Virus record (IMG/VR): IMGVR_UViG_3300037258_000590 | Span: 124,001 to 188,000 of that record | Length of the DNA: 64,000 nucleotides | Strand: one strand, 5' to 3' | In this document: positions 1 to 15,172 of the stretch, one piece after another | How the letters are laid out: each line of letters opens with the position of its first letter | Position numbering within the stretch: position 1 is the stretch's first letter | Notes under the pieces: model-generated | What the model saw: the letters and a program-made list of their open reading frames with translations, nothing else | What the model was told of the DNA's origin: nothing | Database searches by the model: none | Made by a program: the position numbers and the translations under genes

Positions 1-2
1 AG

Positions 3-437: not shown

Positions 438-479
438 GGAGTCCTTTCCTGATCGTCTCGTGTGATACTCAGCGATTGC

Positions 480-749
480 CTACTCACGCCAGGCGGCGGT
501 CTCATCCTGGTAGGCCAGGAACGCTTCGGCGGCGGCTTCCTTCGCAGCACCAGCGTTCACGGCCATGTCGGTGATGTGCGTGCCCGCCTGCTCCAAGCCC
601 TGGCCGCCAGCCCACTCAGCCAGCTCGTCCAGCTTGCGGGCCAGGGTCTCGCAGAACCCCGGCAGGCCTTCGATAGTGGCATGCAGCTCCGCGGGGTCCT
701 CCGGGATGAACCCGGCGGCGACAGTCTCGGTCAGGTCATCGATCTTCAC
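480..749 (-). CDS. TraA-like ~90 aa helical protein of actinomycete plasmids
   Basis: GFIPEDPAELHATIEGLPGFCETLARKLDELAEW pattern; similar to both halves of 746-1354 and the C-terminus of 9512-11401. Confidence 0.55.
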   Translation of the reverse strand: MKIDDLTETVAAGFIPEDPAELHATIEGLPGFCETLARKLDELAEWAGGQGLEQAGTHITDMAVNAGAAKEAAAEAFLAYQDETAAWRE

Positions 750-1354: not shown

Positions 1355-1551
1355 CGGGCGCCTCCGGTTTCAGGTGCGATCTCCGCGATGTCCCAGTCGT
1401 CTCCCCGGATGTAGCGTACGGAGTACCCGCTGGAATAGCGGTGGACCTCGGCGAAGTGCAGGCAGACGACTACCTCGTCATTAGCCATGATCTCCGGGCA
1501 CCAGCCACACTGCACGAGTCCTCCGAGGATGTGCGGCTGTGACAGCACCAT
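1348..1551 (-). CDS. Small hypothetical protein with CxxC
   Basis: Tightly packed in the operon; CGWC motif. Confidence 0.5.
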   Translation of the reverse strand: MVLSQPHILGGLVQCGWCPEIMANDEVVVCLHFAEVHRYSSGYSVRYIRGDDWDIAEIAPETGGARC

Positions 1552-1554
1552 CGG

Positions 1555-2205
1555 TCAGGCTCCCAGCGCCCAGGCGGCGCGCAGCAGGCGGAGCGGGTTC
1601 CACTGGCTGCGCCGCTCAGCAGCCAGGATTACCTCAGCTTGCTTCTCATTCGCCCAGCCGTCCCACGGGACGTAGACGGCGCGACCTGACCGGCGGTACC
1701 GCCAGTAGTTGCTCTTGGTCAGGTTACATGGCTTGCATAGCGCCCGGCAGTTGAACAAGGTAGTAAGCCCGCCGAGTGACCACGGCATCGTGTGATCAAC
1801 TTCCAGGTGGTCGGCGTGTACCATCAGCCGGGCCCGGCAGCTGACGCACCGGTTCCGGTCGGCAGCGAGGACGACACGGCGCAAGCCGGCGCTGATCCGC
1901 GCGGATCGCTGTTCTTCTCGCGGGCGCCGCTTACGGTACCGCTTGCGCCAGTCTCGGGGGACGCACCCGGCTCGCAGCAGTGCAGGCAGGAAGTACAAGC
2001 CTGCCAGCAGGAGCGCAGGGATCACGAACAGCCCGGCGGCGGCCATGGCGCCCAGCCCGGCCCAGCGGAACGGCTCGTGCAGGTCGTGCCAGCCCCACAG
2101 CGGCAGAGCGAGTGCCGGGCCGAACGTGACGACGTGGCTGACGTGATAACTGCGGTACCGGCGGTACTGGCGTGAGGCTGTGCTCCGGCGGCGGACGGCG
2201 GTCAT
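1555..2205 (-). CDS. HNH endonuclease with N-terminal membrane segments
   Basis: DRNRCVSC...LEVDHTMPWSLGGLTTLFNCRALCKPCNLTKSN; two hydrophobic stretches upstream; ATG 2205 after GGAG overlaps the previous stop. Confidence 0.85.
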   Translation of the reverse strand: MTAVRRRSTASRQYRRYRSYHVSHVVTFGPALALPLWGWHDLHEPFRWAGLGAMAAAGLFVIPALLLAGLYFLPALLRAGCVPRDWRKRYRKRRPREEQRSARISAGLRRVVLAADRNRCVSCRARLMVHADHLEVDHTMPWSLGGLTTLFNCRALCKPCNLTKSNYWRYRRSGRAVYVPWDGWANEKQAEVILAAERRSQWNPLRLLRAAWALGA

Positions 2206-2504
2206 GCAGGCTCCTGACCGCGCCGGGTGGCGCTGCGGGCGATCGACCGGCACTGGTCTAGCAGGTTCCGGCCGAATTCGTTCATCTTCACGTACCGGAG
2301 CAGTTCGCGCAGCAGGTGGTCGTCCGGGTCAGGGAACACAGACCCTTCGCCTAGCGCAGCTTCCTGCACGGCGTACCGGATACAAGTCAGGGCGTGCGGG
2401 TTCAGGCGGCGCCACCAGGGGACCTGAGCGAGCTGCGCGTCGAACAGGTTCCCGGCTTCGATCCACCGCGGGTCGGTAATCCGCTGCGCGTAGGCCATGG
2501 CCAT
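2202..2504 (-). CDS. Hypothetical protein
   Basis: Stop overlaps the HNH start (ATGA); start uncertain; overlaps the tail of the DUF4326 ORF by about 100 nt. Confidence 0.45.
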   Translation of the reverse strand: MAMAYAQRITDPRWIEAGNLFDAQLAQVPWWRRLNPHALTCIRYAVQEAALGEGSVFPDPDDHLLRELLRYVKMNEFGRNLLDQCRSIARSATRRGQEPA

Positions 2505-3046
2505 AACCTGGTAACCGCCTGAACGGTGTCTTCCGGGCTGCCGTAGTCGCCGTGCTCGGCGGCGTGCTGCGCTATCGTGTCCGCGGCGATGCACCAGGCC
2601 CATTCCGGCAGTGCGGTAACCGCCCGCAGGATTTCAGGCGCCCAGCCCGGCGCGACGTCAGCGTGGCCGGCCACCGCGATGGCGTGCCCGGTGAGGGCAG
2701 CCAGGAATCCGGCGTCGCCGCCCCCGCACAGCAGGCCGGCCCGCAGCGCATACCACCAGGCGGTGCAAGCAGTACCCGGGAGCAGGAACCTGGTGGCGTC
2801 GGCCAGCCGGGCCAGGACGTCACCGTGGCAGGGCAGCGGCGCGCAATGGCAGCCGAGGCGCAAGCCGCGCAGGGCCGGCAGCATGGCCATCAGGTCCTGG
2901 CGGTGCACGATGTAACGCCAGTACCGGGCGGTCACCTGTTCCCGGTTTCCGTGCTGCCCGATGACAAACGAGTTACCGAGCGGAGTAGTCCGGTCAATCA
3001 GGACGTCATACGGCTCGCGACAGCAGTTGACGACCCGGGTGGTCAT
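2402..3046 (-). CDS. DUF4326 domain protein
   Basis: RVVNCCREPYDVLIDRTTPLGNSFVIG..GNREQV..RY...LRGLRLGCHCAPLPCHGDVLARLAD. Confidence 0.85.
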   Translation of the reverse strand: MTTRVVNCCREPYDVLIDRTTPLGNSFVIGQHGNREQVTARYWRYIVHRQDLMAMLPALRGLRLGCHCAPLPCHGDVLARLADATRFLLPGTACTAWWYALRAGLLCGGGDAGFLAALTGHAIAVAGHADVAPGWAPEILRAVTALPEWAWCIAADTIAQHAAEHGDYGSPEDTVQAVTRLWPWPTRSGLPTRGGSKPGTCSTRSSLRSPGGAA

Positions 3047-3098
3047 GATCCCGGCTCCGCGGCGTCGAGCAGGGCGACCAGGAACTTGTCCCGCAGCC

Positions 3099-3437
3099 TC
3101 ATGACGCGTGGTCTCCGTTCCCGGTGAGCGCCGCGTAATACTGACCGGCGGCAGCTACGAAACCGGCCGGGCCGGGCCAGGCGAACGCGCTGCCAGCCCA
3201 CGCCGCCCGGCTGGCGGCATCAGTCAGGTTCGCCAGGTGCCGCCCGGCCGCGCGACGGCGATTATGGCGATCTTCGCTGTTATCCGGGCCGCCCAGCAGC
3301 CAGTCCAGGACGGGCCCGGTACTGGCGAGAACAGCTGCCGGGTCGGCTTGGCATGCTGCCGCGGTCAGCGCGGACCCGATCTTGAGGGCCAGGTACCGGC
3401 TGTCGCACCGGTCCTGCTCCGCTATCTCCTGCCTCAT
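3099..3437 (-). CDS. Hypothetical protein
   Basis: ATG after ACGGAAGGAA; in operon orientation. Confidence 0.55.
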   Translation of the reverse strand: MRQEIAEQDRCDSRYLALKIGSALTAAACQADPAAVLASTGPVLDWLLGGPDNSEDRHNRRRAAGRHLANLTDAASRAAWAGSAFAWPGPAGFVAAAGQYYAALTGNGDHAS

Positions 3438-3452
3438 CTGCCATTCCTTCCG

Positions 3453-4034
3453 TCAGGGCCTGGTGATCCCCCGGGCCTGCGCGCAGCACAAGGCGGCCAG
3501 CGTGAAGCCGTCCGTTATGTCTCCGGAGGCCACGTGCATCATCAGCTCGGGGACCGGCACCCAGGTGATCGCGCTGACCTCGCCAGCGTCGGCGGTGGCG
3601 AGCTGCTTCTCGTCGTACCCGGCGGCGAACATGTGCACGACGCTGGACAGCAGCCCGGAATCCGGGGTCATCTGGCCGAGCGGCGTGAGCCACTGCGGCG
3701 CGGCGCCGAGTTCTTCCAGCAGTTCTTCCCGGGCCGTGGCCTCCGGGTCAGGCCCGTGAGCGATCCCGCGCGGCAGCCCCCATTCCCACCTCCCGGCCGG
3801 GTAGCGGTAAACCCGGACCAGGCCGGCGTCTCCTCCCGACAGCGGCAGGACCACGACTCCAGGCAGGCCCCCCGGCCGGTCGACGCGCACGTACACCCCC
3901 GGGCGGCCTGCATCGCGGAAGTACACGTCATCGGCGAACACCATGATGAACGCGTTCTCGTACACCAGGCGCTCGCGCAGGCAGATAACCGGGCTTGCCG
4001 GGTCGAGCCGCTGATTACCGGGAAAACCGCTCAT
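3453..4034 (-). CDS. NUDIX hydrolase, ADP-ribose pyrophosphatase (NudF)-like
   Basis: Nudix box LPRGIAHGPDPEATAREELLEELG; LVRVYRYPAGRWEWGLP; terminal ITDGFTLAAL. Confidence 0.9.
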   Translation of the reverse strand: MSGFPGNQRLDPASPVICLRERLVYENAFIMVFADDVYFRDAGRPGVYVRVDRPGGLPGVVVLPLSGGDAGLVRVYRYPAGRWEWGLPRGIAHGPDPEATAREELLEELGAAPQWLTPLGQMTPDSGLLSSVVHMFAAGYDEKQLATADAGEVSAITWVPVPELMMHVASGDITDGFTLAALCCAQARGITRP

Positions 4035-4354
4035 CCGTAATTCCTTCCGCTTCTGCCGGACCGGACGGCCTGGTACTGCGCCGGCGCCAGGATGCGCGAG
4101 GCGAACCGCGGGTGAGCCTTACTGCCCTTGCAGCACCAGCAGTTGCCGAACGGGCGCTGGCTTTCGCTGCGGCCGAGCCGGGAGTAATTAGCCCCGGTAC
4201 CCCTGCAGGTCCGGCACGGCACGTACGGGCGCCGCCAGATGTCAAACCGGTAGTACACGCCGGCGACAGCAGCGCCGATCGCGACAGCGAACCAGCCGAG
4301 CCCGTGCGCCAGCCCGAAGGCCGTTACCCCCGCGAAAACGGCGAGCAGGATCAT
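4031..4354 (-). CDS. Membrane protein with CxxCxGxG zinc finger
   Basis: Hydrophobic N-terminus, then CRTCRGTG...CWCCKGSK. Confidence 0.65.
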   Translation of the reverse strand: MILLAVFAGVTAFGLAHGLGWFAVAIGAAVAGVYYRFDIWRRPYVPCRTCRGTGANYSRLGRSESQRPFGNCWCCKGSKAHPRFASRILAPAQYQAVRSGRSGRNYG

Positions 4355-4361
4355 GGCGTGC

Positions 4362-4487
4362 TCACCCCGCCGAGCCGAAGAACGCGTGCCAGACGCGGTG
4401 GACATCTGCCGAGGCCGTATCCGGGTGGTTGATGGTCCAGATGACGATCCAGGTAAAAACAATCCAGCCGGTTATCTTCCAGAGCAT
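4362..4487 (-). CDS. 41 aa membrane peptide
   Basis: MLWKITGWIVFTWIVIWTINHPDTASADVHRVWHAFFGSAG; RBS GAGG; start overlaps the previous stop. Confidence 0.6.
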   Translation of the reverse strand: MLWKITGWIVFTWIVIWTINHPDTASADVHRVWHAFFGSAG

Positions 4488-4885
4488 TACTCGTCCCTCT
4501 TCACCTGGTCCGGATTGATACTGCGATGGACCCGGCCGGTCATGGCCCGGGAAAGCAGCACGACGACTCCGGCGGCCCCGGCCAGGATAACCAGGCTGCC
4601 GGTGACCAGGGGCGCCAGTTCCCAGGCCAGGGCAGCGAGCACTGCGGCGCCGGCCAGCATGAGCTGCACCAGCAGCCGCCTCGGATGGTTCATCTTGTGC
4701 CACCGGCTGTCGTGGTCAGCTTCCGGGACCACGGTCGCCGGGCGGATCACGTGCAGCAGGATCAGGTGGCCACGGTGATCCTTGATGACGTGATACAGCC
4801 ACGCACCGGCCAGCACGACAGCGACGGCGGTGACCACCGGAGTGCTGACGCCGGTAGCCGTACCGCGCAGGGCAGCCGCATTCAT
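4487..4885 (-). CDS. Small multi-pass membrane protein (Spd-like, inferred)
   Basis: Three hydrophobic segments; transfer-operon context. Confidence 0.55.
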   Translation of the reverse strand: MNAAALRGTATGVSTPVVTAVAVVLAGAWLYHVIKDHRGHLILLHVIRPATVVPEADHDSRWHKMNHPRRLLVQLMLAGAAVLAALAWELAPLVTGSLVILAGAAGVVVLLSRAMTGRVHRSINPDQVKRDE

Positions 4886-4967
4886 GCCCAGGCTTCCTCG
4901 CCGGCCGCGGTCCGCTGCAGGGTGGTCATGCCAGCCCGGGAACCGGAGTACCCGATCGTGATCCAGG

Positions 4968-5231
4968 TCATGCGCCCGGCCCCGCATCGTCAGACCGGTC
5001 ATCATAAACGGGATCTTCGGGAGAATCCCGGTCCTCAGCCCAGAGCCAGGACGCGTAAGCCCGCATAGCAGCTTCATCGCTGTCATGCCCGGCCAGCTTC
5101 CGGACGGGGCCAGGCGAGCTGGCCGCAAGATCAAGAGCAAACCCGGCTCCGAACCTGCAACGCAGCTCGGCCTGCCCAGGCGTCTCGCTGGCCTTCTGCC
5201 CCTCAGCCCACTCGCTGAATTTCGTGCCCAT
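4968..5231 (-). CDS. Hypothetical protein
   Basis: ATG after GGAGAGG. Confidence 0.5.
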   Translation of the reverse strand: MGTKFSEWAEGQKASETPGQAELRCRFGAGFALDLAASSPGPVRKLAGHDSDEAAMRAYASWLWAEDRDSPEDPVYDDRSDDAGPGA

Positions 5232-5706
5232 GATCCTCTCCCTTCAAGCGCTGCTCAGCCGCATCAGCCAAGATGCCTGCCGGGATCTCCGGCGCCTGAT
5301 CATTCTCGCTGGCCATCTCAGGGGCAGGCTCAGCAGGAATCCTCGCCGGCGGTGACGCCAGCACCTCTTCGCACGCCCAGGCTGGCAGGTAATCGCCTCG
5401 CGCGGCCAGGATGACCGGGCTCTCGTACTCAGGTTCAGCCGGAGGTGCGGGTAGCGGCGTGCGGGCGACGATGCGCAGGGCCAGCCAGGCCAGCAGCCCC
5501 GCGGCGGCGCAGGCAACAGCAGCGATGGCGGCGCGCGCAGCCTGGGCTAGCCCCGCGGAGTGCGCGTGCGCCTCGTAACGCGTGCCGCCGGCGAGGATGA
5601 CGGCGATAACCAGCCCGGTCGCGATCCCGGTCCCGGTCATGCTGCACTGCGCGGTCCGGGCCTGGCGGCGGCACCAGGCGCTGTAGCGACCCCGCAGAGT
5701 CCGCAT
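5203..5706 (-). CDS. Membrane protein with Pro-rich tail
   Basis: Two hydrophobic segments; start overlaps the previous stop. Confidence 0.6.
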   Translation of the reverse strand: MRTLRGRYSAWCRRQARTAQCSMTGTGIATGLVIAVILAGGTRYEAHAHSAGLAQAARAAIAAVACAAAGLLAWLALRIVARTPLPAPPAEPEYESPVILAARGDYLPAWACEEVLASPPARIPAEPAPEMASENDQAPEIPAGILADAAEQRLKGEDHGHEIQRVG

Positions 5707-6350
5707 TACGGCCGCCCCTCGATCAGCCCGGCCCAGATCCGGAACAGGCTGCTGTTCAAGCCCGGCCGGTACAGCGGGTCGCCACCGCAGATCTTGCCGC
5801 TGTGGTAGAGGACTTCCAGGAACGTGCGCGACGGCAGGCGGATGGCCCAGCTTCCAGGGTGCCGGAGGCCTGTGCCTGCATGGCCGGTGATGTCGAAGCT
5901 GCCGGCAGCCAGCTGGCGGATCACTTCCAGGGTGGCCTGGTCGGTGACCGCGTGCACGGCGCTGACGTCCTGGTTCTCATCCAGGTCAATCCGGGTGACC
6001 CGGAAGATGCCTGCTGCCACCGCAGTCTCCTGATCGCCGGTCTTATGTACGTCCTTTGCTGTAGTATAGCCGGTGCCCCCGAATCCGGGGATGCTGAACT
6101 CCTGCCCTTCGGGAAACTGCCAGATCCACCGGTCCTTGCCCTCCCGCCGCCTTGCGCGCAAGACGTATCCGTGCTGCTCCGCCCGGTTCAGCCAGGCGTG
6201 CACGGCCTGCCGGCCTGCAGTCAGGCCCTCGTTGTACAGCGCAGCCAGCAGCCAGGGCGCGGTACAGCCCGCAGAGCGGTGCTCGATCAGGAGCTGGTAC
6301 AGCCGCCTGCATGCCGGATGCAGCACCGGGATCTCCTCGTGGTCAGGCAT
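5706..6350 (-). CDS. Winged-helix protein whose N-terminus duplicates the TraB C-terminal domain
   Basis: ATG 6350 lies 2 nt after the TraB stop. RRLYQLLIE...RQAVHAWLNRAEQHGYV...RWIWQFPEGQEFSIPGF vs TraB KRMYTLLIE...RQTVHSWLSQARQQGYV...RWIWQLPEGQEFDIPGF. Confidence 0.75.
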   Translation of the reverse strand: MPDHEEIPVLHPACRRLYQLLIEHRSAGCTAPWLLAALYNEGLTAGRQAVHAWLNRAEQHGYVLRARRREGKDRWIWQFPEGQEFSIPGFGGTGYTTAKDVHKTGDQETAVAAGIFRVTRIDLDENQDVSAVHAVTDQATLEVIRQLAAGSFDITGHAGTGLRHPGSWAIRLPSRTFLEVLYHSGKICGGDPLYRPGLNSSLFRIWAGLIEGRP

Positions 6351-6352
6351 CG

Positions 6353-8998
6353 TCAGCTGAATCCGGGAATGTCGAACTCCTGGCCTTCGGGAAGCTGCCA
6401 GATCCACCGGGCCTTGCCGGACTGCGGCTTGCCGGTGGTGTATACGTAGCCCTGCTGGCGGGCCTGACTCAGCCAGGAGTGCACCGTCTGCCGGGTCACG
6501 CTCAGGTGCTCGTTTTCCAGCCTGGTCCACAGCATCCCGGCGGTGTAGCCCCGGCCGCCCGCCTCGATCAGCAGGGTATACATCCGCTTGCGGACCGGGT
6601 TCAGCTTGTGCCCAGGCTCGTCATCGTCCAGCAGGCCGCCGTCCAGGCCTGCCATGCCGCTCAGCAGCGGGTCGTTCTGCCAGATGGAGTCGAAGTCTTC
6701 CCCGGCCGGGCCGTCCGCCGGGTTACGGTCCGCGGCGCCACCGCCAGCGAGAACGGGGGCGGGGCGGTCCGCGATGCCTGCCTCAGTCTTCCACTGCGCC
6801 AGCAGGCCGGCGATATGCGGCTGCTCCCAGCGCTTGGCGTACGCGTCACCCATCGCGTCCGCAAGCAGTTTCTCCGGTGCCGGGCGCCGTTCCGCGGTGC
6901 TCAGCACGACCGGCGTGATCCGGTCCTCAGTCGGGTGCCCGTCATCATCGGGGCTGCCATCGGTGATGTTGTAGAAGTGGACCGGCGGGTACAGCTCGGA
7001 ACCGACCTTCGGGATGCCCGAGCCTTTGTCCTTCAGCTGGGCCAGCTGCCTGGCCGCGGGGTAGTCGTCGGGGAAAATCGCCTGGCCCTCGCCGATGGTG
7101 GCCACCTTCATCCCGATCCGGACTTCAGCCATGGCCTTGAGGCCGGAGTTACCGGTGACGTCGACTACCGCGCGGACCGCGGCGACCACCGGGTCAATGG
7201 CCACCGACCGGAATGTCTCGGCGATCTGCAGCAGCCGGGTGGCCAGCTGGGTGTTGGAGATGCTGTCCTCGCGGATGAAGTGCCCGGTCATGACCGCGGT
7301 CTCGTCGCAGATCACGATGACGGCCGGAGCCATCTGGCCGTCGTGCTGGATGCCGGGCCGCAGTTTCCGGGCGTACTTTCCCGATTCGGCTCGCGCGGTG
7401 CCGCCCGCCCACAGCGCATCGAGCATGATCTTAGCTTCCTCGCGGTTGGTGGCCAGCCAGTCAATCGGCGGCCGGTCCACATGCCCCTGCAGCCACGGCA
7501 TGAGCCACGCCCTGGCCTCCTGGCCGCCCTTGAGGTCGATCATGAAGATCAGCGCGTCAGGCATCCGGCACAGCTGCGCGATGAAGATATTCAGCAGGGT
7601 GGAGTTGTGCGTCGGTACGCACGCCTGCCCGGCCAGGTACAGGCTGCTCGGGCTGTCCACCTCGATGCATCGCACGGGAACGCTGGGCACGAGCCGGATG
7701 GCGCTGATGCACTGGTAATCCCCGTCTCGTGACCGGAACGGCGCTGCTGTCCTGATGCTGTACGGCACAGCAGTCAGCACTAGCTGTTCCGTCGTAAGAA
7801 CCCTGGGACAGCCGGCCGGGTGCTGCTCCTGCGGAGACCAGACCTGCCACTGATGAGCTGCATCGGCTGTGATCCGCTGGCCGCCGCTGAACTCAATCTC
7901 ATAGCAGCGCCTGCCGTGCAGGACGGCCGTCGTCGCGAGCACCCGGCAGGGCTGCCCGGCCTCATCGAACACCTGGTCTCCGGCCGTAATCTCGCCCATG
8001 GTGGTCCAGCCGGACGGCGTGGCGATCTTCGTATCCAGGGCCAGGGCCTTGCCGGACCCGCGGACCCCGCATATGAACACCACGACTTCGCGCAGTTTCA
8101 GGGCGAACTCGCGCCCGGTATCCAGCACGCCGATCCCGAACGGCCGGTTGACGGACAGCAGGCCGTTCCCCGCAGGCAGCCACCTGGCCACCCGCGGGCC
8201 GCGCAGCTCCCGGACGTGGATGATGAAATCCGCCGCCGAACCGCCAGCCGGCTCCTCCTCGATGTAGACGGCGCCCTTGGGCAGCCGCTTGTGGACGGCC
8301 AGCCGCATAGCCAGGTCCCGGATCGCGTCGTGGGTGAGGACCGCGTGGCCGTCGACCGCTTTGCCGTGCCTGCAGTGCACCTGGTAGCCGCCGTCGACCC
8401 GCAGGATGTCCCGGCAGATGACCCGCGGCACGTTGAGGCGGCCGAGCAGCGCTTCCCAGTACCGGCACTCACGGGTGTTCGTGCTGTCCCGGCCGGTCTC
8501 GGCGACCCGGTTCACCCGGTCCCGGAACCGGCGGATAACGGTAACCCCGGCCGGGGCCAGCATGACAACCGGAAGCAGCAACGCGAAAATCACGGTGCCG
8601 TTCCACGGGCCGGCCAGCCGCGCGGCAGTGAGCCACCCGGTCAGGCACATGCCCCAGATCCCCAGGTACCCGGCCATCGGCGCCGAATTGGTGAGCTGGT
8701 AAGAGGTGTACCAGATCACGGCGGTCATGACGCCCGCGAGGACGGAAAGCATCCACGTCGGAACGCTGTGCGGGACAGCGATCGCCGCGATCCAGGTGAG
8801 CACGGCCGCGGCGAAGCTGGTCTCCAGGACATGCAGCCACAGGCCGTCATCGGCGTGCTTGCCGGGCAGCGGCACATGTCCCGGCCGGTCCCGGCGCCGT
8901 GCCGGGCGCGAGTACGCATCCTCGGCCTGCTCGTCCACCCAGGCTGGCCGCTGCCCCTTCTCGTCCTGCTGTTCGCGGCCACCGTCGATGTCCTTCAC
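6353..8998 (-). CDS. traB: TraB-type FtsK/SpoIIIE conjugative DNA translocase containing an intein
   Basis: N-terminal TM segments; Walker A GVRGSGK|S split by an intein; MIDLKGG motif; Walker B VIVICDE; C-terminal winged helix. Confidence 0.8.
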   Translation of the reverse strand: MKDIDGGREQQDEKGQRPAWVDEQAEDAYSRPARRRDRPGHVPLPGKHADDGLWLHVLETSFAAAVLTWIAAIAVPHSVPTWMLSVLAGVMTAVIWYTSYQLTNSAPMAGYLGIWGMCLTGWLTAARLAGPWNGTVIFALLLPVVMLAPAGVTVIRRFRDRVNRVAETGRDSTNTRECRYWEALLGRLNVPRVICRDILRVDGGYQVHCRHGKAVDGHAVLTHDAIRDLAMRLAVHKRLPKGAVYIEEEPAGGSAADFIIHVRELRGPRVARWLPAGNGLLSVNRPFGIGVLDTGREFALKLREVVVFICGVRGSGKALALDTKIATPSGWTTMGEITAGDQVFDEAGQPCRVLATTAVLHGRRCYEIEFSGGQRITADAAHQWQVWSPQEQHPAGCPRVLTTEQLVLTAVPYSIRTAAPFRSRDGDYQCISAIRLVPSVPVRCIEVDSPSSLYLAGQACVPTHNSTLLNIFIAQLCRMPDALIFMIDLKGGQEARAWLMPWLQGHVDRPPIDWLATNREEAKIMLDALWAGGTARAESGKYARKLRPGIQHDGQMAPAVIVICDETAVMTGHFIREDSISNTQLATRLLQIAETFRSVAIDPVVAAVRAVVDVTGNSGLKAMAEVRIGMKVATIGEGQAIFPDDYPAARQLAQLKDKGSGIPKVGSELYPPVHFYNITDGSPDDDGHPTEDRITPVVLSTAERRPAPEKLLADAMGDAYAKRWEQPHIAGLLAQWKTEAGIADRPAPVLAGGGAADRNPADGPAGEDFDSIWQNDPLLSGMAGLDGGLLDDDEPGHKLNPVRKRMYTLLIEAGGRGYTAGMLWTRLENEHLSVTRQTVHSWLSQARQQGYVYTTGKPQSGKARWIWQLPEGQEFDIPGFS
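7604..8047 (-). mobile_element. Class 3 mini-intein (148 aa, no homing endonuclease) in TraB Walker A
   Basis: Starts ALALDT, ends VPTHN, +1 Ser; WCT triplet: ADAAHQW (block B), VRCIEV (block F), PTHN (block G). Confidence 0.9.
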
Positions 8999-9000
8999 GG

Positions 9001-9297
9001 TCAGCCTCCTCCCGGCGGCTCGGTTGCCGCGCGTACCAGCAACGCGAACTCGTTAGCAGCGTCTGCCGGGCCTGTGCTGCTGGCCTTCAGCGACTCGGCG
9101 GGCGGGTAACCCTGCGCCAGGTCCTCGACCAGGTACTCCGGTGTCTGCCTGCACCCGGCGCACATCGCATCGAGCCCGCTGGTCAGGGCGAGATCTCCGT
9201 CACGGGCGATGCAGGGGGTCATGTCAGACCTGGCCCACGGGCAGCCGACGTACTCAGGATCGTCGTCGTACCGCCCGTAACCCGCAGGTCCCTTCAT
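9001..9297 (-). CDS. Cys-containing hypothetical protein
   Basis: RBS AGGATTGAGG; CPW...CIARDG...CAGC. Confidence 0.6.
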   Translation of the reverse strand: MKGPAGYGRYDDDPEYVGCPWARSDMTPCIARDGDLALTSGLDAMCAGCRQTPEYLVEDLAQGYPPAESLKASSTGPADAANEFALLVRAATEPPGGG

Positions 9298-9314
9298 CGC
9301 CTCAATCCTTCCTG

Positions 9315-9512
9315 TCAGCCGGGTCCGTGCCGGAATTCTCGTAGCCGGCCGCGGAGCCGGGACGCCGGCCGGGCCTTCGGCGTGACAGCGACTCGCATCA
9401 GCTCATGATGCGGCGCGACAGCCAGCCTCCTGGCATCAAGTTCAGCATCTTCGGCATACACGCCGGCCGCGGAACCGGGCTCAGTGCGGACAACGATCCA
9501 TACGCTGGCCAT
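9315..9512 (-). CDS. Small hypothetical protein
   Basis: Start overlaps the previous stop. Confidence 0.5.
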   Translation of the reverse strand: MASVWIVVRTEPGSAAGVYAEDAELDARRLAVAPHHELMRVAVTPKARPASRLRGRLREFRHGPG

Positions 9513-11401
9513 CAGCCGCCTGGCCCGCGCATCACGCCGCCGGCGGTGACCTGTTCCAGGCTGTCGGCGATCCCGGCCATGCCGCCGGCTGCCTCCCGGG
9601 CCGCCTCACCGTACCGCGGGTGCACCCCGGTCTCATCGAATCGCTCGCCGTAGCCGTGCAGCACATCCTGAAGTGCCCCGACCAGTTCGTGCAGTCCGGT
9701 CAGGCTGTCGTGCACGTCTTGCGGATCGTGGAACTCCCGGCCGCCCAGCTCCCTGATCTGCTCGGCCATCGCTCCTGTATCCATGTTTCCTCCTGACAGC
9801 GGCCACAACGGGCCGGATCTTCCTGGCATCCCCGCCGCGGAAGGCGCGGATGCGGTCTGCGGAACCGGGACGCCAGCCGGGCGGCGCTGGCGGGCCAGCC
9901 ACCGGTCCTGCCGGCGCCGGTCCAGGTTCCGCAGCCTGCTGGTGAGCCAGCTGTTGCGGTGCCGGCCGCCGTGCGCCCACGCCCTCGGAGGCCGCCGGTT
10001 GCGGCGGATCCGGCGGAACCAGGCCCGCACGGGCCGGCCGTGCCGGCTGAGGCCTGCCCGGGTGACGTGCCCGCCCAGGCCCGCCAGCCGGATCCGCAAC
10101 GGCACGTGCCGTCTGGTGCCGAGCCCGAGCCCGCGGTACTTCCGCCGCCGCAGCCAGAAACCGTGCCACCGGGTCGCTACCCTGGCCCGCCACGGCAGGC
10201 GCGTCCCGGCACGGCGGCGTTTCGCGATTGCGCGCCTGGCCTGCCGGCGGCGCATCGTAGCCCGCAAGCCGCCGCCGCGGGTCCAGATCCGCCACGGCGC
10301 CCACAACGGCACACGACGCCGGTACGGATTCCGCGCGGCTCGTTTACGCGCGGCCCGCAGCCTGACCCGGTGAGCCTTGCGCCTGCTCCGGAGATAGGCG
10401 CGCCGTTCCGGGCGGCCGATCACCTTCCAGGCCTGGCGGCGGAAAAACCCGGCCCGCTTCAGTCCGGCCGGACGGCGGAACCAGGTCCGCGGGCGGGCCA
10501 GGCGGCGGGCCCAGGTCCGCGGGCGGAACCAGGTCCGCGGGCGGAACCAGGTCCGCGGGCGGAACAGGCGGCGCAGGCGAGCTGTCCCGCCCGCGGCGCC
10601 AGCGGTACGCGGCCGTCGCCCGATGCGGAAGCGGCGCCTGCGCGCTGTCCCTCCCGCCGCCCCGCCGCCAGGACGACGGCCGCGCGGTCCGGTACCGGTG
10701 CGCGGCCGTCGCCAGGTGGACGGGCGGAGCAGGCGGCGGCGGGGAACGCGGGGAGCGGTGCCGCCTGCTCCAGTCCTTCGCCGGGTCCGGGGAGAACCCC
10801 CCGGAAGCCGGCGGATCCTGCGAAAAGCCGGCGAAGACCGCCTGGCAGTGCCGGGATTCCGCCTGGGGCCGCGGAACAGCGCTGCCCGGCGGCCGGCTCC
10901 GCTGCCGGAACGGCCGCCAGGCCCGCGCCGCGCCGCAGAACGCCTGTGCGCGCCACCGGAAGCCCCCGCACCTGTCCCGCGCCGGCGGGGGCCAGCCCCC
11001 AGCGAGCGCAGCGCACTGCGGCCCCGACCGCGGGCCCTGCTGAACATGGCACCGCCACCGCGATGCCCGGCCAGCTGGCGGAAACCCCTGCCGCGCTGGC
11101 CGGGCCAGTTGAGACTGCCGCTGGTCCGCGTCCGGGTCACCCGGGTCGAGGTCCTGGCCTGACGTTCCCGGCGGCCGAACGGATGGAAGTGCCGCTGCAA
11201 GTGCGGGTAACGGAACAAGCCGAGCAGCAGCAGCGCGCCACCCCCGGTGCCGGCCAGGACCCACATCGACAGCCGGCCGCCCATGGCATGCTCAGCGATC
11301 AGCAGGGCTCCGGCGGCGAGCAGGATAACGAGAATGACACGACGCCATCCGATCCTGCCCGCGGGGGGGTCCGGTGCGCTAGTCTCAGGACCTGTTGTCA
11401 T
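9512..11401 (-). CDS. TraA-like protein: two TM segments, long Arg-rich region, C-terminal helical module
   Basis: Continuous ORF; RPRTWF repeats near 10480-10570; in-frame internal ATG 9784 with AGGAGG RBS. Confidence 0.6.
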   Translation of the reverse strand: MTTGPETSAPDPPAGRIGWRRVILVILLAAGALLIAEHAMGGRLSMWVLAGTGGGALLLLGLFRYPHLQRHFHPFGRRERQARTSTRVTRTRTSGSLNWPGQRGRGFRQLAGHRGGGAMFSRARGRGRSALRSLGAGPRRRGTGAGASGGAHRRSAARRGPGGRSGSGAGRRAALFRGPRRNPGTARRSSPAFRRIRRLPGGSPRTRRRTGAGGTAPRVPRRRLLRPSTWRRPRTGTGPRGRRPGGGAAGGTARRRRFRIGRRPRTAGAAGGTARLRRLFRPRTWFRPRTWFRPRTWARRLARPRTWFRRPAGLKRAGFFRRQAWKVIGRPERRAYLRSRRKAHRVRLRAARKRAARNPYRRRVPLWAPWRIWTRGGGLRATMRRRQARRAIAKRRRAGTRLPWRARVATRWHGFWLRRRKYRGLGLGTRRHVPLRIRLAGLGGHVTRAGLSRHGRPVRAWFRRIRRNRRPPRAWAHGGRHRNSWLTSRLRNLDRRRQDRWLARQRRPAGVPVPQTASAPSAAGMPGRSGPLWPLSGGNMDTGAMAEQIRELGGREFHDPQDVHDSLTGLHELVGALQDVLHGYGERFDETGVHPRYGEAAREAAGGMAGIADSLEQVTAGGVMRGPGG

Positions 11402-12422
11402 GGCCAGCTCCGTTCCGCTTAGCGCGGACTTCCTGCAGGACGCCTGCCGCGGTGCGGACACTGCCGTTCAGGCGGGCGTCATCCCTGGCCAGATGCCTGA
11501 CACTGGGCAGGGACTGCACGCCGAGGAGGTCCAGGACGACCTGCGCCCGGACTTCCGAAGCCACCGCCAGCCCCGCGGTACGGGCCGCGCGGCCGGGTAC
11601 CAGCCCGGCGCGGCTCCCGGTCCGTTGAGGACGGGGCTGACGGTGACGTCTCCGCGTGGCGGCCGGACCCGCTGCCTGCCCGGCGCCACGACTATCCAGG
11701 TGCTCCCTGGCAGTCTGAGTCTGGTTACCTGCGGGATGCCGCGTCAACTCACGCATGTCCCACTTCGGCGGGGCAACCAGCTTGATGGCCTCGGCGGGCC
11801 GGTTCTCGCCAGCCCACGCGGCCCGCCTGCGCACCTTCCAAGACAAGAACGGGTAGAAGAACGACCGCGTGAAACCGAGCCGGACGGCGTGGTCCTCGAT
11901 CTGGTCACAGGCCTTGAGGTCGTCACGGGACTCGCGGTTAGAGTGAATCCCCCACAGCACCGGGCTGAACACCGAGGCCACGCCGACCGCGATGGCAAAG
12001 GTATCGGGCCGCCAGCCCGGCTCACAGAAGTGGCTGTAATTCAAAGCGCCGATGCCGAGGCCGGTCAGGTAAGCCCCCAGCCGCAGCCGGAGCGCGGAGT
12101 CTCCCTTGAGCCGGGCGACGTGAGCCTGCCAGGCCAGGTAGACAGCGATGGATTCCAGCGCCGTAGCGACCACCGCGCTGACCGCGGACGGGATAGTGAC
12201 ACCCGGGACGGGATGCCGGTGCGACTGGAAGTACAAGAACTGCCCGTAGAACGCGACGAAGTTGACCAGGACGATCGGCACGGCTGCCAGCCACGCCCGG
12301 TGACTGCCGTGCTCCCGGGCGCGGCGGTTCTCAGCTCGCGTGCCAAGCACGAGAAGACCCGCGGTAACAACATCGCTCAGGCCTCGTGACCTGGGCCGGG
12401 AGTCCCGGTTAGGCTGTCCCAT
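11385..12422 (-). CDS. DUF2637/SpdB-like membrane protein with C-terminal HTH-like segment
   Basis: ATG after GGAGG; four TM segments (AVPIVLVNFVAFYGQ, ALESIAVYLAWQAH, LGIGALNYSH, SPVLWGIHS); IEDHAVRLGFTRSFFYP motif. Confidence 0.6.
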   Translation of the reverse strand: MGQPNRDSRPRSRGLSDVVTAGLLVLGTRAENRRAREHGSHRAWLAAVPIVLVNFVAFYGQFLYFQSHRHPVPGVTIPSAVSAVVATALESIAVYLAWQAHVARLKGDSALRLRLGAYLTGLGIGALNYSHFCEPGWRPDTFAIAVGVASVFSPVLWGIHSNRESRDDLKACDQIEDHAVRLGFTRSFFYPFLSWKVRRRAAWAGENRPAEAIKLVAPPKWDMRELTRHPAGNQTQTAREHLDSRGAGQAAGPAATRRRHRQPRPQRTGSRAGLVPGRAARTAGLAVASEVRAQVVLDLLGVQSLPSVRHLARDDARLNGSVRTAAGVLQEVRAKRNGAGHDNRS

Positions 12423-12608
12423 GTCCGGTGCACCTCCAACCAGGTGGTCCGGGTCAGGGGGCGTGGACCCGGTAGGTCGGGACCACGCCCCCGTGTTGAC
12501 TTCAGGTGACGGTAAGGGTATCACGCAGGACCCTTACCGTCGTTAACTACTTACCCTGCCGCCGTGTTCCCCCTGGGCGTGACAGCCCTGGGAAACGCCT
12601 GTGCTGTT

Positions 12609-12734
12609 TCAGGAACGGCGTTCCATGCCGCTAGCTGACAGCAGCCTGGCGACAAGCCCTGTCGCGGACTGGGCCACTTCCGCGGCCTGATGCAGGGCTG
12701 CTGCGCCGTTGCTGGCCCCATTCGGGTTGTACAT
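12609..12734 (-). CDS. 41 aa peptide
   Basis: ATG after CAGGAG. Confidence 0.4.
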   Translation of the reverse strand: MYNPNGASNGAAALHQAAEVAQSATGLVARLLSASGMERRS

Positions 12735-12862
12735 GATGATCTCCTGCCACGTCCCGGGCGGCCAGGCGGTTCCTGGCCGTTCTGCCGGATAATGCAACGA
12801 ACGCCTGCACGTGCACGAAACATTCCGCGCGTCAGCTGACGCAATCAGGTCACACGATCCGC

Positions 12863-13198
12863 TCAGGCAGCGCTCACCTTGTCGAACGTGTAGTACAGCT
12901 GAATAGGGGCGCTCACATCAGGCGGCACAGCCTCCATGTCGATCTGGCCACCCTGGAACACGCTGGCGTCGTCGGTCCCGAACACCGTGACCGGCTCGCC
13001 GTGAACGGCCGGATCGGGCCCGCGGCGGACACCAGTTATCTCCAGCTTGCCTCTCGTGAACCGCATTGTCGTAACCGGGTACGAGCGGCCGGCTACGACA
13101 ATGCGGCCCAGCGGCTGCCGCCCGCCCGGCAACTGCGGTACCTGCCCCGGCTTGCCTGCGCGGATCCGGCACCACTTACGCCAGGCCACCCGCTTCAC
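12863..13198 (-). CDS. Hypothetical protein
   Basis: RBS GGAGGT; GTG start overlaps the previous stop. Confidence 0.6.
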   Translation of the reverse strand: MKRVAWRKWCRIRAGKPGQVPQLPGGRQPLGRIVVAGRSYPVTTMRFTRGKLEITGVRRGPDPAVHGEPVTVFGTDDASVFQGGQIDMEAVPPDVSAPIQLYYTFDKVSAA

Positions 13199-13751
13199 TG
13201 TGCACCTCCGGCGTACGCAGTAATCAGCACGGCAATCTTATCCGCGGCTTCGTACGCCCCCGGCGGCCACTCGATCTCGAATACGGCCGGGCTCATCCCG
13301 CAATCGGTACTGACAATAAGCCGCCAGCCGCCCAGGCCGTCATGACAGCCAGCCAGGAAATGCGCCAGCTGCGGCAACGCGGCCAGGTCATCGGCAGCCA
13401 GCCAGATCCGGAACGGCCGCTCGCCGTGACCGCAGCAAGATTCAGCGGTCGCCAGGCCCGGCACAGCGCGATCACCTCAGGATCGATGTCCGCGGGAGGC
13501 GTCCGCGCAGCGGTCTCCGCATCGTCGTCTTCGGGCAGCCTCGCTGAGGCATGGCGTTCCGGATCGGCGAGCCACGCCCGGAATGCCCGCCACCGCGCGG
13601 CATGGACCTCCGGTACCGGGTTCCCGGTCGCAGGCCCGTGCCGGGCGCTGTCACGATACGAGCGGCACGATTCGCCAGGCGCCGCACCGCAGCTGTCACA
13701 CCCGGCGACGGAACGAACCCGCGTGCGACGGCCGTAACTACGTGACATCAC
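13195..13751 (-). pseudogene. Frameshifted gene: phage-type Zn finger followed by a PGxxTxESCCGHG domain
   Basis: Frame 1 gives CDSCGAAPGESC...HAARW...IDPEVIALC; a second frame continues PGLATAESCCGHGERPFRIW; junction near 13455-13465. Confidence 0.5.
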
Positions 13752-14098
13752 GCCTCCGGTCCTGCGTTACGCGACACGGTGTCTCACATGACGCAGCCGG
13801 CCTGAATGCGAGCACCGGCACAGCAGTGTTCCGCCGGACATGGCGTGCCAGCGCCCGGCGGGCCGCAAGCGGCTGTCCCAGCCAAGCCACGTCCGGCGCT
13901 CCGGTGCTGTCACGGCTGAGGTCTTCCGCAACGCTGGCACAACCCGGACCAGCCTCCGTCAACCCGCGACTGCGGACTGGCAGGCGGCCGGAAACGATGG
14001 GGCACGATACGCCAGAAGCGCCGCCGCCAGGATTTACCGGGAACCGGAAGGAAGTGCGGGCGTCTCCTGGTCATGCCACCCCGCCGGGCCTCAGGCCG

Positions 14099-14698: not shown

Positions 14699-14789
14699 TG
14701 ACTGATCGCCGCGGCCAGCCGCGCCTGTTGCGAGGAACGGCAGCTGAGCACAGCATGCGCAAAACCCGTATCGCGCAGCAGGCAGCCCC

Positions 14790-15125: not shown

Positions 15126-15172
15126 ACCCCCATTGTAGCCATCCGTAAAAGCCTCCAGCTGGAACATCACGG

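What the first reader, a model, noticed from the sequence alone, without database searches (positions are those of the whole stretch)
7604..8047. Class 3 mini-intein splitting the Walker A motif of a conjugative TraB translocase
Seen: GVRGSGK|ALALDT...VPTHN|STLL with the WCT signature. Established: Ala-starting class 3 inteins are known mainly from mycobacterial DnaB and actinophage proteins, and inteins favour P-loops. Inference: DNA transfer needs splicing first, so conjugation could be gated by conditions acting on the block F Cys (redox, metals). With no endonuclease, persistence suggests domestication or homing in trans.
Basis: partly seen in the sequence, partly recalled or inferred. Interest (0 to 1): 0.68.

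Follow-up and report, generated by a model that had tools for sequence, protein, structure and literature searches.

The report
Mini-intein in a phage DNA pump
A 148-residue self-splicing protein insert (a class 3 mini-intein of the mycobacterial DnaB type) splits the ATP-binding loop of a membrane-anchored FtsK/TraB-like DNA pump, but the gene lies in a 210-kb soil actinophage rather than a conjugative plasmid, and the insert looks like a worn-down mobile element, not a proven switch.

Summary
Window 7604-8047 (minus strand) encodes a 148-aa insert, ALALDT...VPTHN. It lies between Lys317 and Ser466 of the Walker A motif of an 881-aa protein (window 6353-8998, minus strand). The insert aligns end to end with the solved class 3 DnaBi1 inteins (6BS8, E 2e-33) and keeps every catalytic residue. 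Thirty-six intein-less homologues read GxxGSGK-ST without interruption.

The host protein is an FtsK/SpoIIIE-type translocase with N-terminal membrane helices and a C-terminal winged helix, so it is TraB-like in architecture. It falls far below the curated plasmid TraB threshold.

The replicon is not a conjugative element. It is a complete 210,383-bp virus record with portal, HK97 capsid and terminase genes, and no integrase or Par genes were found.

Four homologues carry LAGLIDADG-bearing inteins of the same lineage at the same site. Intein-bearing alleles are scattered among empty ones on the extein tree. This mini-intein is therefore best read as an endonuclease-loss derivative of a homing intein.

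Splicing must precede ATPase function; that is an inference. Gating by redox or zinc is plausible because C48, C127 and Y137 are conserved, but it is untested.

The same intein family already sits in the P-loops of chromosomal FtsK, DnaB and terminases. This is a new member of a known kind.

The phage carries seven putative inteins.

The parts
6353..8998 (-). Precursor gene, 881 aa: a membrane-anchored FtsK/SpoIIIE (TraB-like) DNA translocase interrupted by an intein
   Evidence: ORF and translation; GC3 0.88; homologues at 55-75% identity
8048..8998 (-). N-extein, residues 1-317: disordered N-terminus, four predicted membrane helices, a beta-rich domain, and the first half of the Walker A motif
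   Evidence: AF2 models; hydropathy; alignment A1
8495..8842 (-). Membrane-helix region, about residues 53-168
   Evidence: Helices H53-74, H81-103, H106-129 and H134-168 in the precursor model; hydrophobic 19-mers
8048..8068 (-). Walker A, N-terminal part: GVRGSGK, residues 311-317
   Evidence: G311, G314, G316 and K317 are invariant in the 15-sequence alignment
7604..8047 (-). Class 3 mini-intein, 148 aa, protein residues 318-465
   Evidence: Full-length match to 6BS8, 6RIX and 6RIY at E ~1e-33; precise insertion relative to intein-less homologues; beta-rich domain in the precursor model
7904..7906 (-). Intein Cys48. In Msm DnaBi1 this residue is the disulfide partner of the catalytic Cys
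   Evidence: role in DnaBi1 from PMC6195587
7847..7864 (-). Intein block B: DAAHQW, containing Asp62, His65 and Trp67 (the W of the WCT triplet)
   Evidence: same numbering as Msm DnaBi1
7709..7840 (-). Linker between blocks B and F, intein residues 69-112. LAGLIDADG-bearing alleles carry their endonuclease at this place. It keeps the PRVLTTEQL segment that precedes the endonuclease in those alleles
   Evidence: Alignment A1, columns 425-780; pairwise alignment with P0056
7667..7669 (-). Block F:4 Cys127, the predicted initiating nucleophile (the C of WCT)
   Evidence: equivalent to Cys118 of DnaBi1
7604..7612 (-). Block G end: Thr146-His147-Asn148 (the T of WCT, the penultimate His, and the terminal Asn)
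7601..7603 (-). Ser466. It is both the +1 nucleophile and the Walker A Ser (the S of GKS)
   Evidence: invariant in alignment A1
6353..7603 (-). C-extein, residues 466-881, plus the stop codon: the rest of the motor domain, a linker and the C-terminal winged helix
   Evidence: PHROG phrog_31069 FtsK/SpoIIIE-like at E 5.3e-22; tblastn hits to Streptomyces plasmid genes annotated 'DNA translocase FtsK'
7301..7321 (-). Walker B-like motif VIVICDE, residues 560-566
   Evidence: E566 is invariant
6398..6598 (-). C-terminal winged-helix-like domain, about residues 801-867
   Evidence: Three helices followed by a beta hairpin at pLDDT >90 in the AF2 models; Pfam MCM_C winged-helix hit in 2 homologues
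9001..9297 (-). Conserved 98-aa gene immediately upstream, function unknown. It travels with the translocase gene
   Evidence: 64% identical to the gene directly upstream of the homologue on contig L002

Best explanation
Window 7604-8047 (minus strand) encodes a 148-aa class 3 mini-intein. It belongs to the large 'ALALDT...PTHN' intein family that targets the Lys|Ser/Thr bond of P-loops; the solved relatives are the mycobacterial DnaBi1 inteins.

The intein interrupts the Walker A motif of the only FtsK/SpoIIIE-type gene found in a complete 210-kb uncultured soil actinophage genome. The host protein has four membrane helices, an FtsK-like motor and a C-terminal winged helix. It therefore resembles Streptomyces TraB in architecture but is a phage protein of unknown role.

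The intein belongs to a lineage specific to this site in this gene family. Other members of that lineage carry a LAGLIDADG homing endonuclease exactly where this one has a 44-residue linker. I infer that it is an endonuclease-loss derivative, left behind by the usual cycle of homing, decay and loss.

Shown: the insert, its class, its site, its relatives, and the family and fold of the host protein.

Inferred: the precursor cannot bind or hydrolyse ATP because 148 residues separate the P-loop Lys from the Ser. After translation, Cys127 attacks the Lys317-Ala318 bond. The branch is passed to Ser466, Asn148 cyclises, and a contiguous GVRGSGKST loop is formed. Only the spliced protein can assemble into a working DNA pump.

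Splicing is probably largely constitutive. By analogy with DnaBi1 it could be slowed by oxidants (a C48-C127 disulfide) or by zinc (C127 and Y137).
For: Intein identity:
- Full-length phmmer matches to 6BS8/6OWN (E 2e-33) and 6RIX/6RIY.
- A1, C48, D62, H65, W67, C127, Y137, T146, H147, N148 and S+1 are all present. Their roles in DnaBi1 are described in PMC6195587 and PMC7360933.

Precise insertion:
- 36 intein-less homologues read G-x-x-G-S/A-G-K-S contiguously.

Host family:
- PHROG FtsK/SpoIIIE-like on the window's own C-extein, E 5e-22.
- Pfam FtsK_SpoIIIE in 9 of 15 family members.
- The AF2 model of orthologue P0004 (pLDDT 81) matches FtsK motor structures 6T8B, 2IUT and 2IUS at E ~1e-14 and TM 0.61-0.69, followed by EccC and TcpA.
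- No second FtsK_SpoIIIE match in the genome.

Phage context:
- Virus record rated 100% complete; portal at E 1e-35, HK97 capsid at E 6e-56, TerL PHROG at E 2e-53.
- A homologue's 92-kb contig carries a portal gene 9 kb away.

Endonuclease-loss origin:
- P0008, P0011, P0039 and P0042 carry 390-462-aa inteins with LAGLIDADG_3 at the same site.
- In the intein tree the six inteins from this site cluster together (SH-aLRT 90) and apart from chromosomal FtsK inteins.
- On the C-extein tree the six occupied alleles need six changes, the maximum. The window's nearest relatives, P0004 and P0005, have empty sites.

Not a one-off or an assembly error:
- The same 881-aa protein occurs on three further contigs.
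- A soil run from a different study has a contig that spans the whole intein and both junctions with 2 mismatches.
- A second diverged lineage, P0056 (a cluster of 22 members), has a 140-aa mini-intein at the same site.
Against: - No splicing has been observed; activity is inferred from conserved residues only.
- Pfam and NCBIfam do not recognise the intein or the interrupted host protein. Identification rests on the PDB sequence match, PHROGs, and intein-less homologues.
- The direction of change (endonuclease lost rather than gained) is inferred from the retained flanking linker and from general knowledge. It is not resolved by the tree, where the two mini-inteins sit in a polytomy.
- The role of the translocase in the phage is unknown.
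- A mini-intein kept in two diverged lineages could mean selection for retention.
Confidence: 0.8

Rival explanations
1. The gene is the TraB of a conjugative plasmid or integrative element of a mycelial actinomycete, and the intein gates conjugative DNA transfer.
For: - TraB-like architecture: membrane helices, FtsK motor and winged helix.
- The NCBIfam plasmid_TraB model hits 28 of 34 homologues, best E 8e-16.
- The C-extein matches Streptomyces plasmid 'DNA translocase FtsK' genes at 26-30% identity.
- Neighbouring genes include a NUDIX protein and a DUF2637 protein. A homologue's contig has a divergent GntR-family gene, which from memory recalls Streptomyces kil/kor transfer modules.
Against: - The replicon is a complete virus record with portal, HK97 capsid and terminase.
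- No integrase, ParA or ParB was found.
- There is no near-identical plasmid DNA in PLSDB.
- The plasmid_TraB score is tens of bits against a cut-off of 800.
- Close homologues lie on phage-like contigs.
- No clt-like repeat was found near the gene.
Confidence: 0.07
2. Domesticated switch. The mini-intein is kept by selection as a conditional (redox- or zinc-sensitive) post-translational regulator that times activation of the phage DNA pump.
For: - It has no endonuclease yet is retained intact. It recurs in several soil datasets and in a second diverged lineage of 22 members.
- C48, C127 and Y137 are conserved; these are the DnaBi1 residues involved in disulfide and zinc inhibition.
- There are four further cysteines: C34, C80, C113 and C143.
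- The splicing domain (59-73% identity across hosts) is better conserved than the exteins (41% overall between the window protein and P0056).
Against: - The nearest extein relatives have empty sites, and occupancy is scattered as expected for a selfish element.
- C48 is required for splicing itself in DnaBi1, so its conservation says nothing about regulation.
- An intein in an essential motif cannot be lost except by precise deletion, and that alone explains persistence.
- There are no experimental data.
Confidence: 0.1
3. Dead insert. The intein no longer splices, and the translocase gene is a decaying or neofunctionalised remnant.
For: - Splicing is untested.
- The intein has the lowest GC3 of the gene, 0.82 against 0.88-0.90.
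- The endonuclease has already been lost, so decay has started.
Against: - All catalytic residues are intact.
- The 881-codon frame is open with high GC3.
- The exteins keep every invariant family residue, including Walker A and Walker B.
- The allele recurs nearly unchanged in independent soil runs.
Confidence: 0.05

Closest known systems
Mycobacterial DnaBi1 class 3 mini-inteins (M. smegmatis, PDB 6BS8/6OWN; M. chimaera, 6RIX/6RIY)
   Same: - End-to-end alignment at E ~1e-33.
- Same size class, 139-148 aa, with no endonuclease.
- Same insertion point between the P-loop Lys and Ser.
- Same residues: A1, C48, D62-x-x-H65, W67, the block F Cys, the Tyr of block F, THN and Ser+1.
   Different: - The host protein is an FtsK/TraB-like translocase of a phage, not the cellular replicative helicase.
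- The linker differs and is slightly longer.
- There are four extra cysteines.
- Splicing and its sensitivity to oxidants or zinc have not been tested here.
LAGLIDADG-bearing inteins at the same site of the same translocase family (metagenomic proteins P0008, P0011, P0039, P0042)
   Same: - Same Lys|Ser site and same start and end motifs.
- Splicing-domain identity of 63-73%.
- Same intein clade.
   Different: They are 390-462 aa long and carry a LAGLIDADG_3 endonuclease, in some cases with flanking Cys-rich segments, where the window intein has a 44-residue linker.
Inteins in the P-loop of chromosomal FtsK of Micromonospora and Streptosporangiaceae (e.g. P0081, P0105, P0107, P0157)
   Same: - Same intein family, with 63-67% identity in the splicing domain.
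- Same Lys|Ser position in an FtsK-family Walker A motif.
   Different: - The hosts are cellular FtsK proteins with 4TM, alpha and gamma domains.
- All of these inteins carry LAGLIDADG endonucleases.
- They form a separate intein clade.
Class 3 inteins of actinobacteriophages (terminase large subunit, Cas4 exonuclease, helicase, minor capsid; PMC5050341 and bioRxiv 10.1101/2025.01.02.630785)
   Same: - Phage-borne class 3 inteins in P-loop and nuclease motifs, with sporadic distribution among intein-free alleles.
- This same phage has such inteins in its terminase and in an exonuclease.
   Different: - Neither survey mentions an FtsK-like or translocase extein.
- Phage class 3 inteins reported there are 225-359 aa; this one is 148 aa with no endonuclease.
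Streptomyces plasmid TraB (NCBIfam NF041214) and FtsK motor (PDB 6T8B, 2IUT)
   Same: - Membrane anchor, hexameric-type FtsK motor fold and C-terminal winged helix.
- Weak profile similarity to TraB.
- Strong structural match to the FtsK motor.
   Different: - It is encoded by a phage.
- It scores far below the TraB equivalog cut-off.
- No clt or TRS repeats were found.
- Function is unknown, as for other actinophage FtsK-like genes.

Membership tests
Class 3 intein | No Cys/Ser/Thr nucleophile at intein position 1 | tested here: met
   Position 1 is Ala
Class 3 intein | WCT triplet: Trp in block B (B:12), Cys in block F (F:4), Thr in block G (G:5) | tested here: met
   W67, C127 and T146 align with W67, C118 and T137 of Msm DnaBi1
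Class 3 intein | Block B His, C-terminal His-Asn, and a nucleophilic +1 residue | tested here: met
   D62-x-x-H65, H147-N148 and Ser466
Class 3 intein | Hint fold, or homology to a solved class 3 intein | tested here: met
   Full-length alignment to 6BS8, 6RIX and 6RIY at E ~1e-33. The precursor AF2 model has a beta-rich domain, mostly at pLDDT 80-90. The Pfam Hint models did not fire.
Class 3 intein | Splicing proceeds through a block F Cys branched thioester intermediate | not testable with these tools
   Needs expression plus mass spectrometry or mutagenesis (C127A)
Mini-intein | No homing endonuclease domain between blocks B and F | tested here: met
   The insert is 148 aa and has no LAGLIDADG or HNH hit. 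Endonuclease-bearing alleles are 242-314 aa longer at exactly this place.
Intein in general | Precise in-frame insertion whose removal restores a conserved host motif | tested here: met
   36 intein-less homologues have a contiguous GxxGxGK-S(T/N)L. I did not build the joined extein sequence.
FtsK/SpoIIIE translocase family | Profile match to the family's motor domain | tested here: met
   The window's C-extein hits phrog_31069 at E 5e-22. PF01580 hits 9 of 15 family members. PF01580 does not fire on the interrupted window protein itself.
FtsK/SpoIIIE translocase family | Walker A and Walker B motifs and an FtsK motor fold | tested here: met
   GVRGSGK|S and VIVICDE are present. The model of orthologue P0004 matches 6T8B, 2IUT and 2IUS at E ~1e-14 over about 420 columns. 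The fold was tested on the orthologue, not on a joined window sequence.
Streptomyces conjugative TraB | Score above the NCBIfam NF041214 equivalog cut-off (800 bits) | tested here: not met
   12-15 bits for the window pieces and for P0004. The best E among homologues is 8e-16, still far below the cut-off.
Streptomyces conjugative TraB | Carried on a conjugative plasmid or AICE (replication or integration functions, spd genes) | tested here: not met
   The replicon is a complete phage genome. No integrase, ParA or ParB was found. There is only a weak DUF2637 neighbour.
Streptomyces conjugative TraB | The winged helix binds repeated 8-bp TRS motifs in a clt locus | tested here: inconclusive
   A winged-helix-like domain is predicted. 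An 8-mer scan found no clear repeated or skewed motif. Binding cannot be tested here.
Streptomyces conjugative TraB | Membrane-associated N-terminal region | tested here: met
   Four long helices at residues 53-168 with pLDDT >90, plus the hydropathy profile

The most novel reading that the evidence does not exclude
A jumbo actinophage has captured a TraB-like, membrane-anchored dsDNA pump and its conserved small partner gene. It uses them to move phage DNA between hyphal compartments or cells, a conjugation-like spread without virions. The endonuclease-free class 3 intein has been kept as a redox- or zinc-sensitive fuse that holds the pump inactive until conditions are right.
Probability: 0.05. 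Interest if true: 0.85.

Novelty: new member of a known kind. Interest (0 to 1): 0.4.

Why it matters
It adds a phage FtsK/TraB-like translocase to the extein hosts of class 3 inteins. This host is not listed in the two actinophage intein surveys I could read.

Within one gene family it also shows all three states of the intein life cycle: empty sites, endonuclease-bearing inteins and two mini-inteins. That makes the family a convenient natural system for studying endonuclease loss and intein persistence.

Because the intein is about 55-60% identical to DnaBi1 and keeps the redox- and zinc-sensitive residues, it offers a ready comparison for testing whether conditional splicing is a general property of this intein family or specific to mycobacterial DnaB.

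The broader open question it touches is what FtsK-like pumps do in actinophages.

The phage itself carries seven putative inteins in 210 kb, which makes it a useful specimen for studying intein spread.

Tried and rejected
- Pfam and NCBIfam on the whole precursor and on each piece gave nothing usable except plasmid_TraB at E 0.03-0.05. The interruption and the divergence of the family hide it from those models. PHROGs, intein-less homologues and structure resolved it.
- Megablast of window 1-20000 against plasmids found no match.
- The scan of GTDB species genomes with the family alignment found only one locus, an uncultured Actinomycetota MAG at 35% identity. The family is essentially metagenomic.
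- I first took the element for a circular plasmid, because the contig's prefix and suffix are identical. I rejected that once portal, capsid and terminase genes were found. The 127-nt overlap, made of a 24-nt tandem repeat, may simply be an assembler overlap.
- Tyrosine integrase, ParB, ParA-type AAA_31 and a second FtsK_SpoIIIE gene were sought in the genome and not found.
- A search for clt-, TRS- or KOPS-like 8-mers, both near the gene and genome-wide, found nothing convincing.
- Contigs from four soil runs were laid on the gene. None shows a precise intein-less joint. Contigs drop rare variants, so this is not evidence of absence.
- The literature search found no paper describing an intein in FtsK or TraB. 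The library is incomplete, so this is weak evidence of novelty.
- The exteins were searched separately by reference, and a natural intein-less orthologue (P0004) was folded instead.
- The big representative-protein search was not needed and was not used.
Full report
**1. The observation**

The finding's coordinates lie inside one long minus-strand frame, window 6353-8998, which encodes 881 aa with GC3 of 0.88. Residues 318-465 map exactly to window 7604-8047.

The insert has Ala at position 1, Asp62-x-x-His65 and Trp67 in block B, Cys127 in block F, Thr146-His147-Asn148 at its end, and Ser as the next residue. A phmmer search of PDB chain sequences aligns all 148 residues with the crystallised class 3 inteins: M. 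smegmatis DnaBi1 (6BS8/6OWN, E 2.2e-33) and M. chimaera DnaBi1 (6RIX/6RIY, E 6e-33).

**2. Precise insertion in the Walker A motif**

A word search using the C-extein region found 41 relatives, and a 42nd, P0056, came from the intein search. Thirty-six of them, about 570-745 aa long, have an uninterrupted G-x-x-G-S/A-G-K-S-T/N-L motif. Removing residues 318-465 from the window protein would produce exactly this motif. Gly311, Gly314, Gly316, Lys317 and Ser466 are invariant in the alignment.

Each extein was searched by reference, and natural intein-less orthologues served as the spliced reference.

**3. The host protein**

Pfam and NCBIfam are blind to the interrupted protein. Other evidence identifies it:
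- The window's own C-extein matches PHROG phrog_31069, 'FtsK/SpoIIIE-like protein', at E 5.3e-22.
- Orthologue P0004 (72% identical to the window protein) matches the same PHROG at E 3e-27.
- Pfam FtsK_SpoIIIE hits 9 of 15 aligned family members.
- An AlphaFold2 model of P0004 (mean pLDDT 81) shows four long N-terminal helices, a beta-rich domain, a P-loop motor and a C-terminal winged-helix-like domain.
- Foldseek places that model on FtsK motor structures 6T8B, 6T8G, 2IUT and 2IUS (E ~1e-14, target TM 0.61-0.69, about 420 aligned columns). Next come EccC, the pCW3 coupling protein TcpA, EssC and HerA.
- A Walker B-like VIVICDE lies at residues 560-566.

The 'TraB' part is only an architectural resemblance. 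NCBIfam plasmid_TraB hits 28 of 34 homologues with best E 8e-16. Scores are tens of bits against an 800-bit equivalog cut-off.

**4. The replicon is a phage**

The window is bases 124001-188000 of a single 210,383-bp contig with 67.6% GC. The genome tool identifies it as a virus record with direct terminal repeats and a completeness estimate of 100%.

- It encodes a portal protein (PF04860, E 1e-35), an HK97-type capsid protein (PF05065, E 6e-56) and a terminase large subunit (phrog_9, E 2e-53).
- No tyrosine integrase, ParB, ParA-type ATPase or second FtsK_SpoIIIE gene was found.
- The capsid's best cultured relatives are Streptomyces phages, at only about 32% identity.
- The gene is held by soil metagenomes from five studies.
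- Close homologues lie on phage-like contigs, one with a portal gene 9 kb away.
- A distant clade, represented by P0043, sits in a chromosomal neighbourhood next to rho.

'Conjugative' is therefore not supported. FtsK-like genes are common in actinophages, and their role is unknown.

A 98-aa gene directly upstream (window 9001-9297) is conserved with the translocase on contig L002.

**5. Where the mini-intein came from**

Four homologues (P0008, P0011, P0039, P0042) carry 390-462-aa inteins at the same Lys|Ser site. These have the same end motifs and a LAGLIDADG_3 endonuclease placed exactly where the window intein has its linker. The segment just before the endonuclease (P-E/R-V/I-L-T-T-E-Q) is retained in the mini-intein.

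A second, diverged lineage (P0056, a cluster of 22 members, 41% overall identity) has a 140-aa mini-intein at the same site.

On a C-extein tree the six occupied alleles are each nested among empty-site relatives. They need six changes, the maximum possible, and the window's nearest relatives, P0004 and P0005, are empty. On an intein tree the six inteins from this site cluster together (SH-aLRT 90), apart from a clade of inteins in chromosomal FtsK (SH-aLRT 89) and from DnaB inteins.

This is the pattern of a site-specific homing intein that invades repeatedly and then decays. Endonuclease loss is a simpler account of an endonuclease-free intein than domestication. Such an intein persists because only a precise deletion could remove it from an essential motif.

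Mobilisation in trans by an endonuclease-bearing allele during co-infection is possible but untested.

The intein has the lowest GC3 in the gene, 0.82 against 0.88-0.90. The difference is modest.

**6. How widespread the intein family is**

The intein region finds 2,380 proteins at E <= 1e-5. Inspection of junctions shows the same ALALDT...PTHN element at the Lys|Ser/Thr bond of several P-loop proteins:
- chromosomal FtsK of Micromonospora and Streptosporangiaceae, with LAGLIDADG;
- DnaB, in both mini and full-length forms;
- a secretion-type ATPase;
- an AAA_25 primase-helicase;
- terminases.

Splicing-domain identity to the window intein is 59-73% across all of these. An intein of this family in an FtsK-family P-loop therefore already exists in public data. 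I found no paper describing it.

The two surveys of actinophage inteins list 19 extein hosts. Class 3 inteins occur in only four of them, at sizes of 225-359 aa, and no FtsK-like host is mentioned.

**7. Mechanism**

Shown: all residues used by DnaBi1 are present at equivalent positions.

Inferred from PMC6195587 and PMC7360933:
- Cys127 attacks the Lys317-Ala318 peptide bond.
- The N-extein is passed to Ser466.
- Asn148 cyclises, and the exteins are joined.
- Because the P-loop Lys and Ser are separated by 148 residues, the precursor should not bind ATP productively. In the precursor model the junction residues 312-316 and 462-466 are the least confident parts of the motor.

In DnaBi1, oxidants form a reversible C48-C118 disulfide, and zinc binds C118, the backbone of V119 and Y128. 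Here the equivalents C48, C127, I128 and Y137 are conserved. Sensitivity to these conditions is therefore plausible. However, C48 is needed for splicing itself in DnaBi1, so its conservation is not evidence of a regulatory role.

**8. Independent support for the allele**

The identical 881-aa protein occurs on three further contigs. In a soil run from a different study, one contig covers window 7516-8432, which includes the whole intein and both junctions, with two mismatches. No contig shows a precise intein-less version of this phage's gene, but contigs do not report rare variants.

**9. Verdict**

- The class 3 mini-intein in the Walker A motif is real.
- The host is an FtsK-family, TraB-like translocase, but of a jumbo soil actinophage rather than a conjugative element.
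- The intein is best explained as an endonuclease-loss derivative of a homing intein lineage.
- Conditional splicing is a reasonable but untested analogy.
- The finding is a new member of a known kind and of moderate interest.
- The side observation that this phage carries seven putative inteins may be at least as useful.

Noticed in passing
window 55596-57668 (+): This is a second intein in the window, in a 690-aa protein. The exteins match PHROG 'DNA topoisomerase' (phrog_6247, E 2e-76). The insert is a class 1 intein (..YIE|CLPP...VHN|CWVE..) with LAGLIDADG_3 and Hint_2 hits.
   Followed up: partly
G000:C1:107015-109855 (-), outside the window (locus L007): The terminase large subunit (phrog_9, E 2e-53) carries a class 3 intein with a LAGLIDADG endonuclease beside its P-loop (..RQNGKNQ|AISV...PTHN|C..). 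This intein is related to the one in the finding, at E 5e-19.
   Followed up: partly
G000:C1:572-3463 (-), outside the window (locus L006): An exonuclease-like protein (phrog_1674, E 3e-44) carries a class-3-like intein with LAGLIDADG. The intein is atypical: it starts IFVST, its block B has no obvious His or Trp, and it ends PVHN|C with Val instead of Thr at G:5.
   Followed up: partly
G000:C1:101548-104259 (-), 51041-53317 (-) and 79200-81404 (-), outside the window: There are three more putative class 1 inteins:
- In the portal protein, where the Pfam match is split by about 345 aa (..S|CVTED...FTGN|T..).
- In a 759-aa protein of unknown family (..W|CVDSS...SHN|S..).
- In a 735-aa frame (..K|CIDSS...YSHN|S..) with LAGLIDADG_3 at E 3e-16.

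Together with the others this makes seven putative inteins in one 210-kb phage genome. The intein in the finding is the only one short enough to exclude an endonuclease; the portal insert and the 759-aa protein's insert gave no confident endonuclease hit.
   Followed up: partly
G000:C1:1-127 and 210257-210383: The contig's first and last 127 bases are identical. They consist of about 5 copies of a 24-nt tandem repeat, which has 13 copies in the genome. The 'direct terminal repeat' may be an assembler overlap inside a repeat array rather than a true phage end.
   Followed up: partly
window 15173-17320: This stretch holds a dense cluster of tandem repeats: a perfect 35-nt unit x4.8 at 16185-16352, a 56-nt unit x2.3 at 15707-15834, a 13-nt unit x3.8 at 15978-16028, and a 15-nt unit x9 at 17177-17320. 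It lies at the boundary between the minus-strand gene block that contains the translocase and the long plus-strand block. It may be an origin or a regulatory region.
   Followed up: no
window about 12000-64000: AT skew is strongly positive (0.1-0.22) across 50 kb. This coincides with nearly all called genes lying on the plus strand and being mostly small ORFs of unknown function.
   Followed up: no
proteins P0008, P0011, P0039 (homologues; contig L002 for P0011): The endonuclease-bearing alleles contain one or two copies of a Cys-rich segment (C-x-L-A-x-x-x-C-x-P-S-x-x ... C-x-N-H-Y/W ... R-R-A-G-R-x-D-Q-W-P) flanking the LAGLIDADG core. This may be a small zinc-binding DNA-recognition module. 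It is absent from the mini-intein.
   Followed up: no
locus L011 (contig of P0043): A distant clade of the translocase family (33-39% identity) sits in an ordinary actinobacterial chromosomal neighbourhood, next to rho and near LytR_cpsA_psr, MptA and Ppx-GppA genes. One member of this clade, P0042, also carries an endonuclease-bearing intein at the same site. The intein lineage therefore spans this distant clade, one member of which is chromosomal, and the phage-like clade.
   Followed up: partly
window 7631-7675 and 7989-8012 (soil run X1, a 1,408-nt contig): In the probable source sample, another contig matches only two short stretches inside the intein. It has 1,201 nt between them where the window has 313 nt. 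This suggests a related, endonuclease-bearing intein in another genome of the same soil. The matches are short, 24-45 nt.
   Followed up: no
window 1555-4034 (-): On the same strand and downstream of the translocase are a NUDIX hydrolase gene (3453-4034), a DUF4326 gene (2402-3046) and a free-standing HNH endonuclease gene (1555-2253). A DUF2637-like membrane protein lies upstream (11385-12524). A homologue's contig also has an HNH gene just downstream of its translocase.
   Followed up: no
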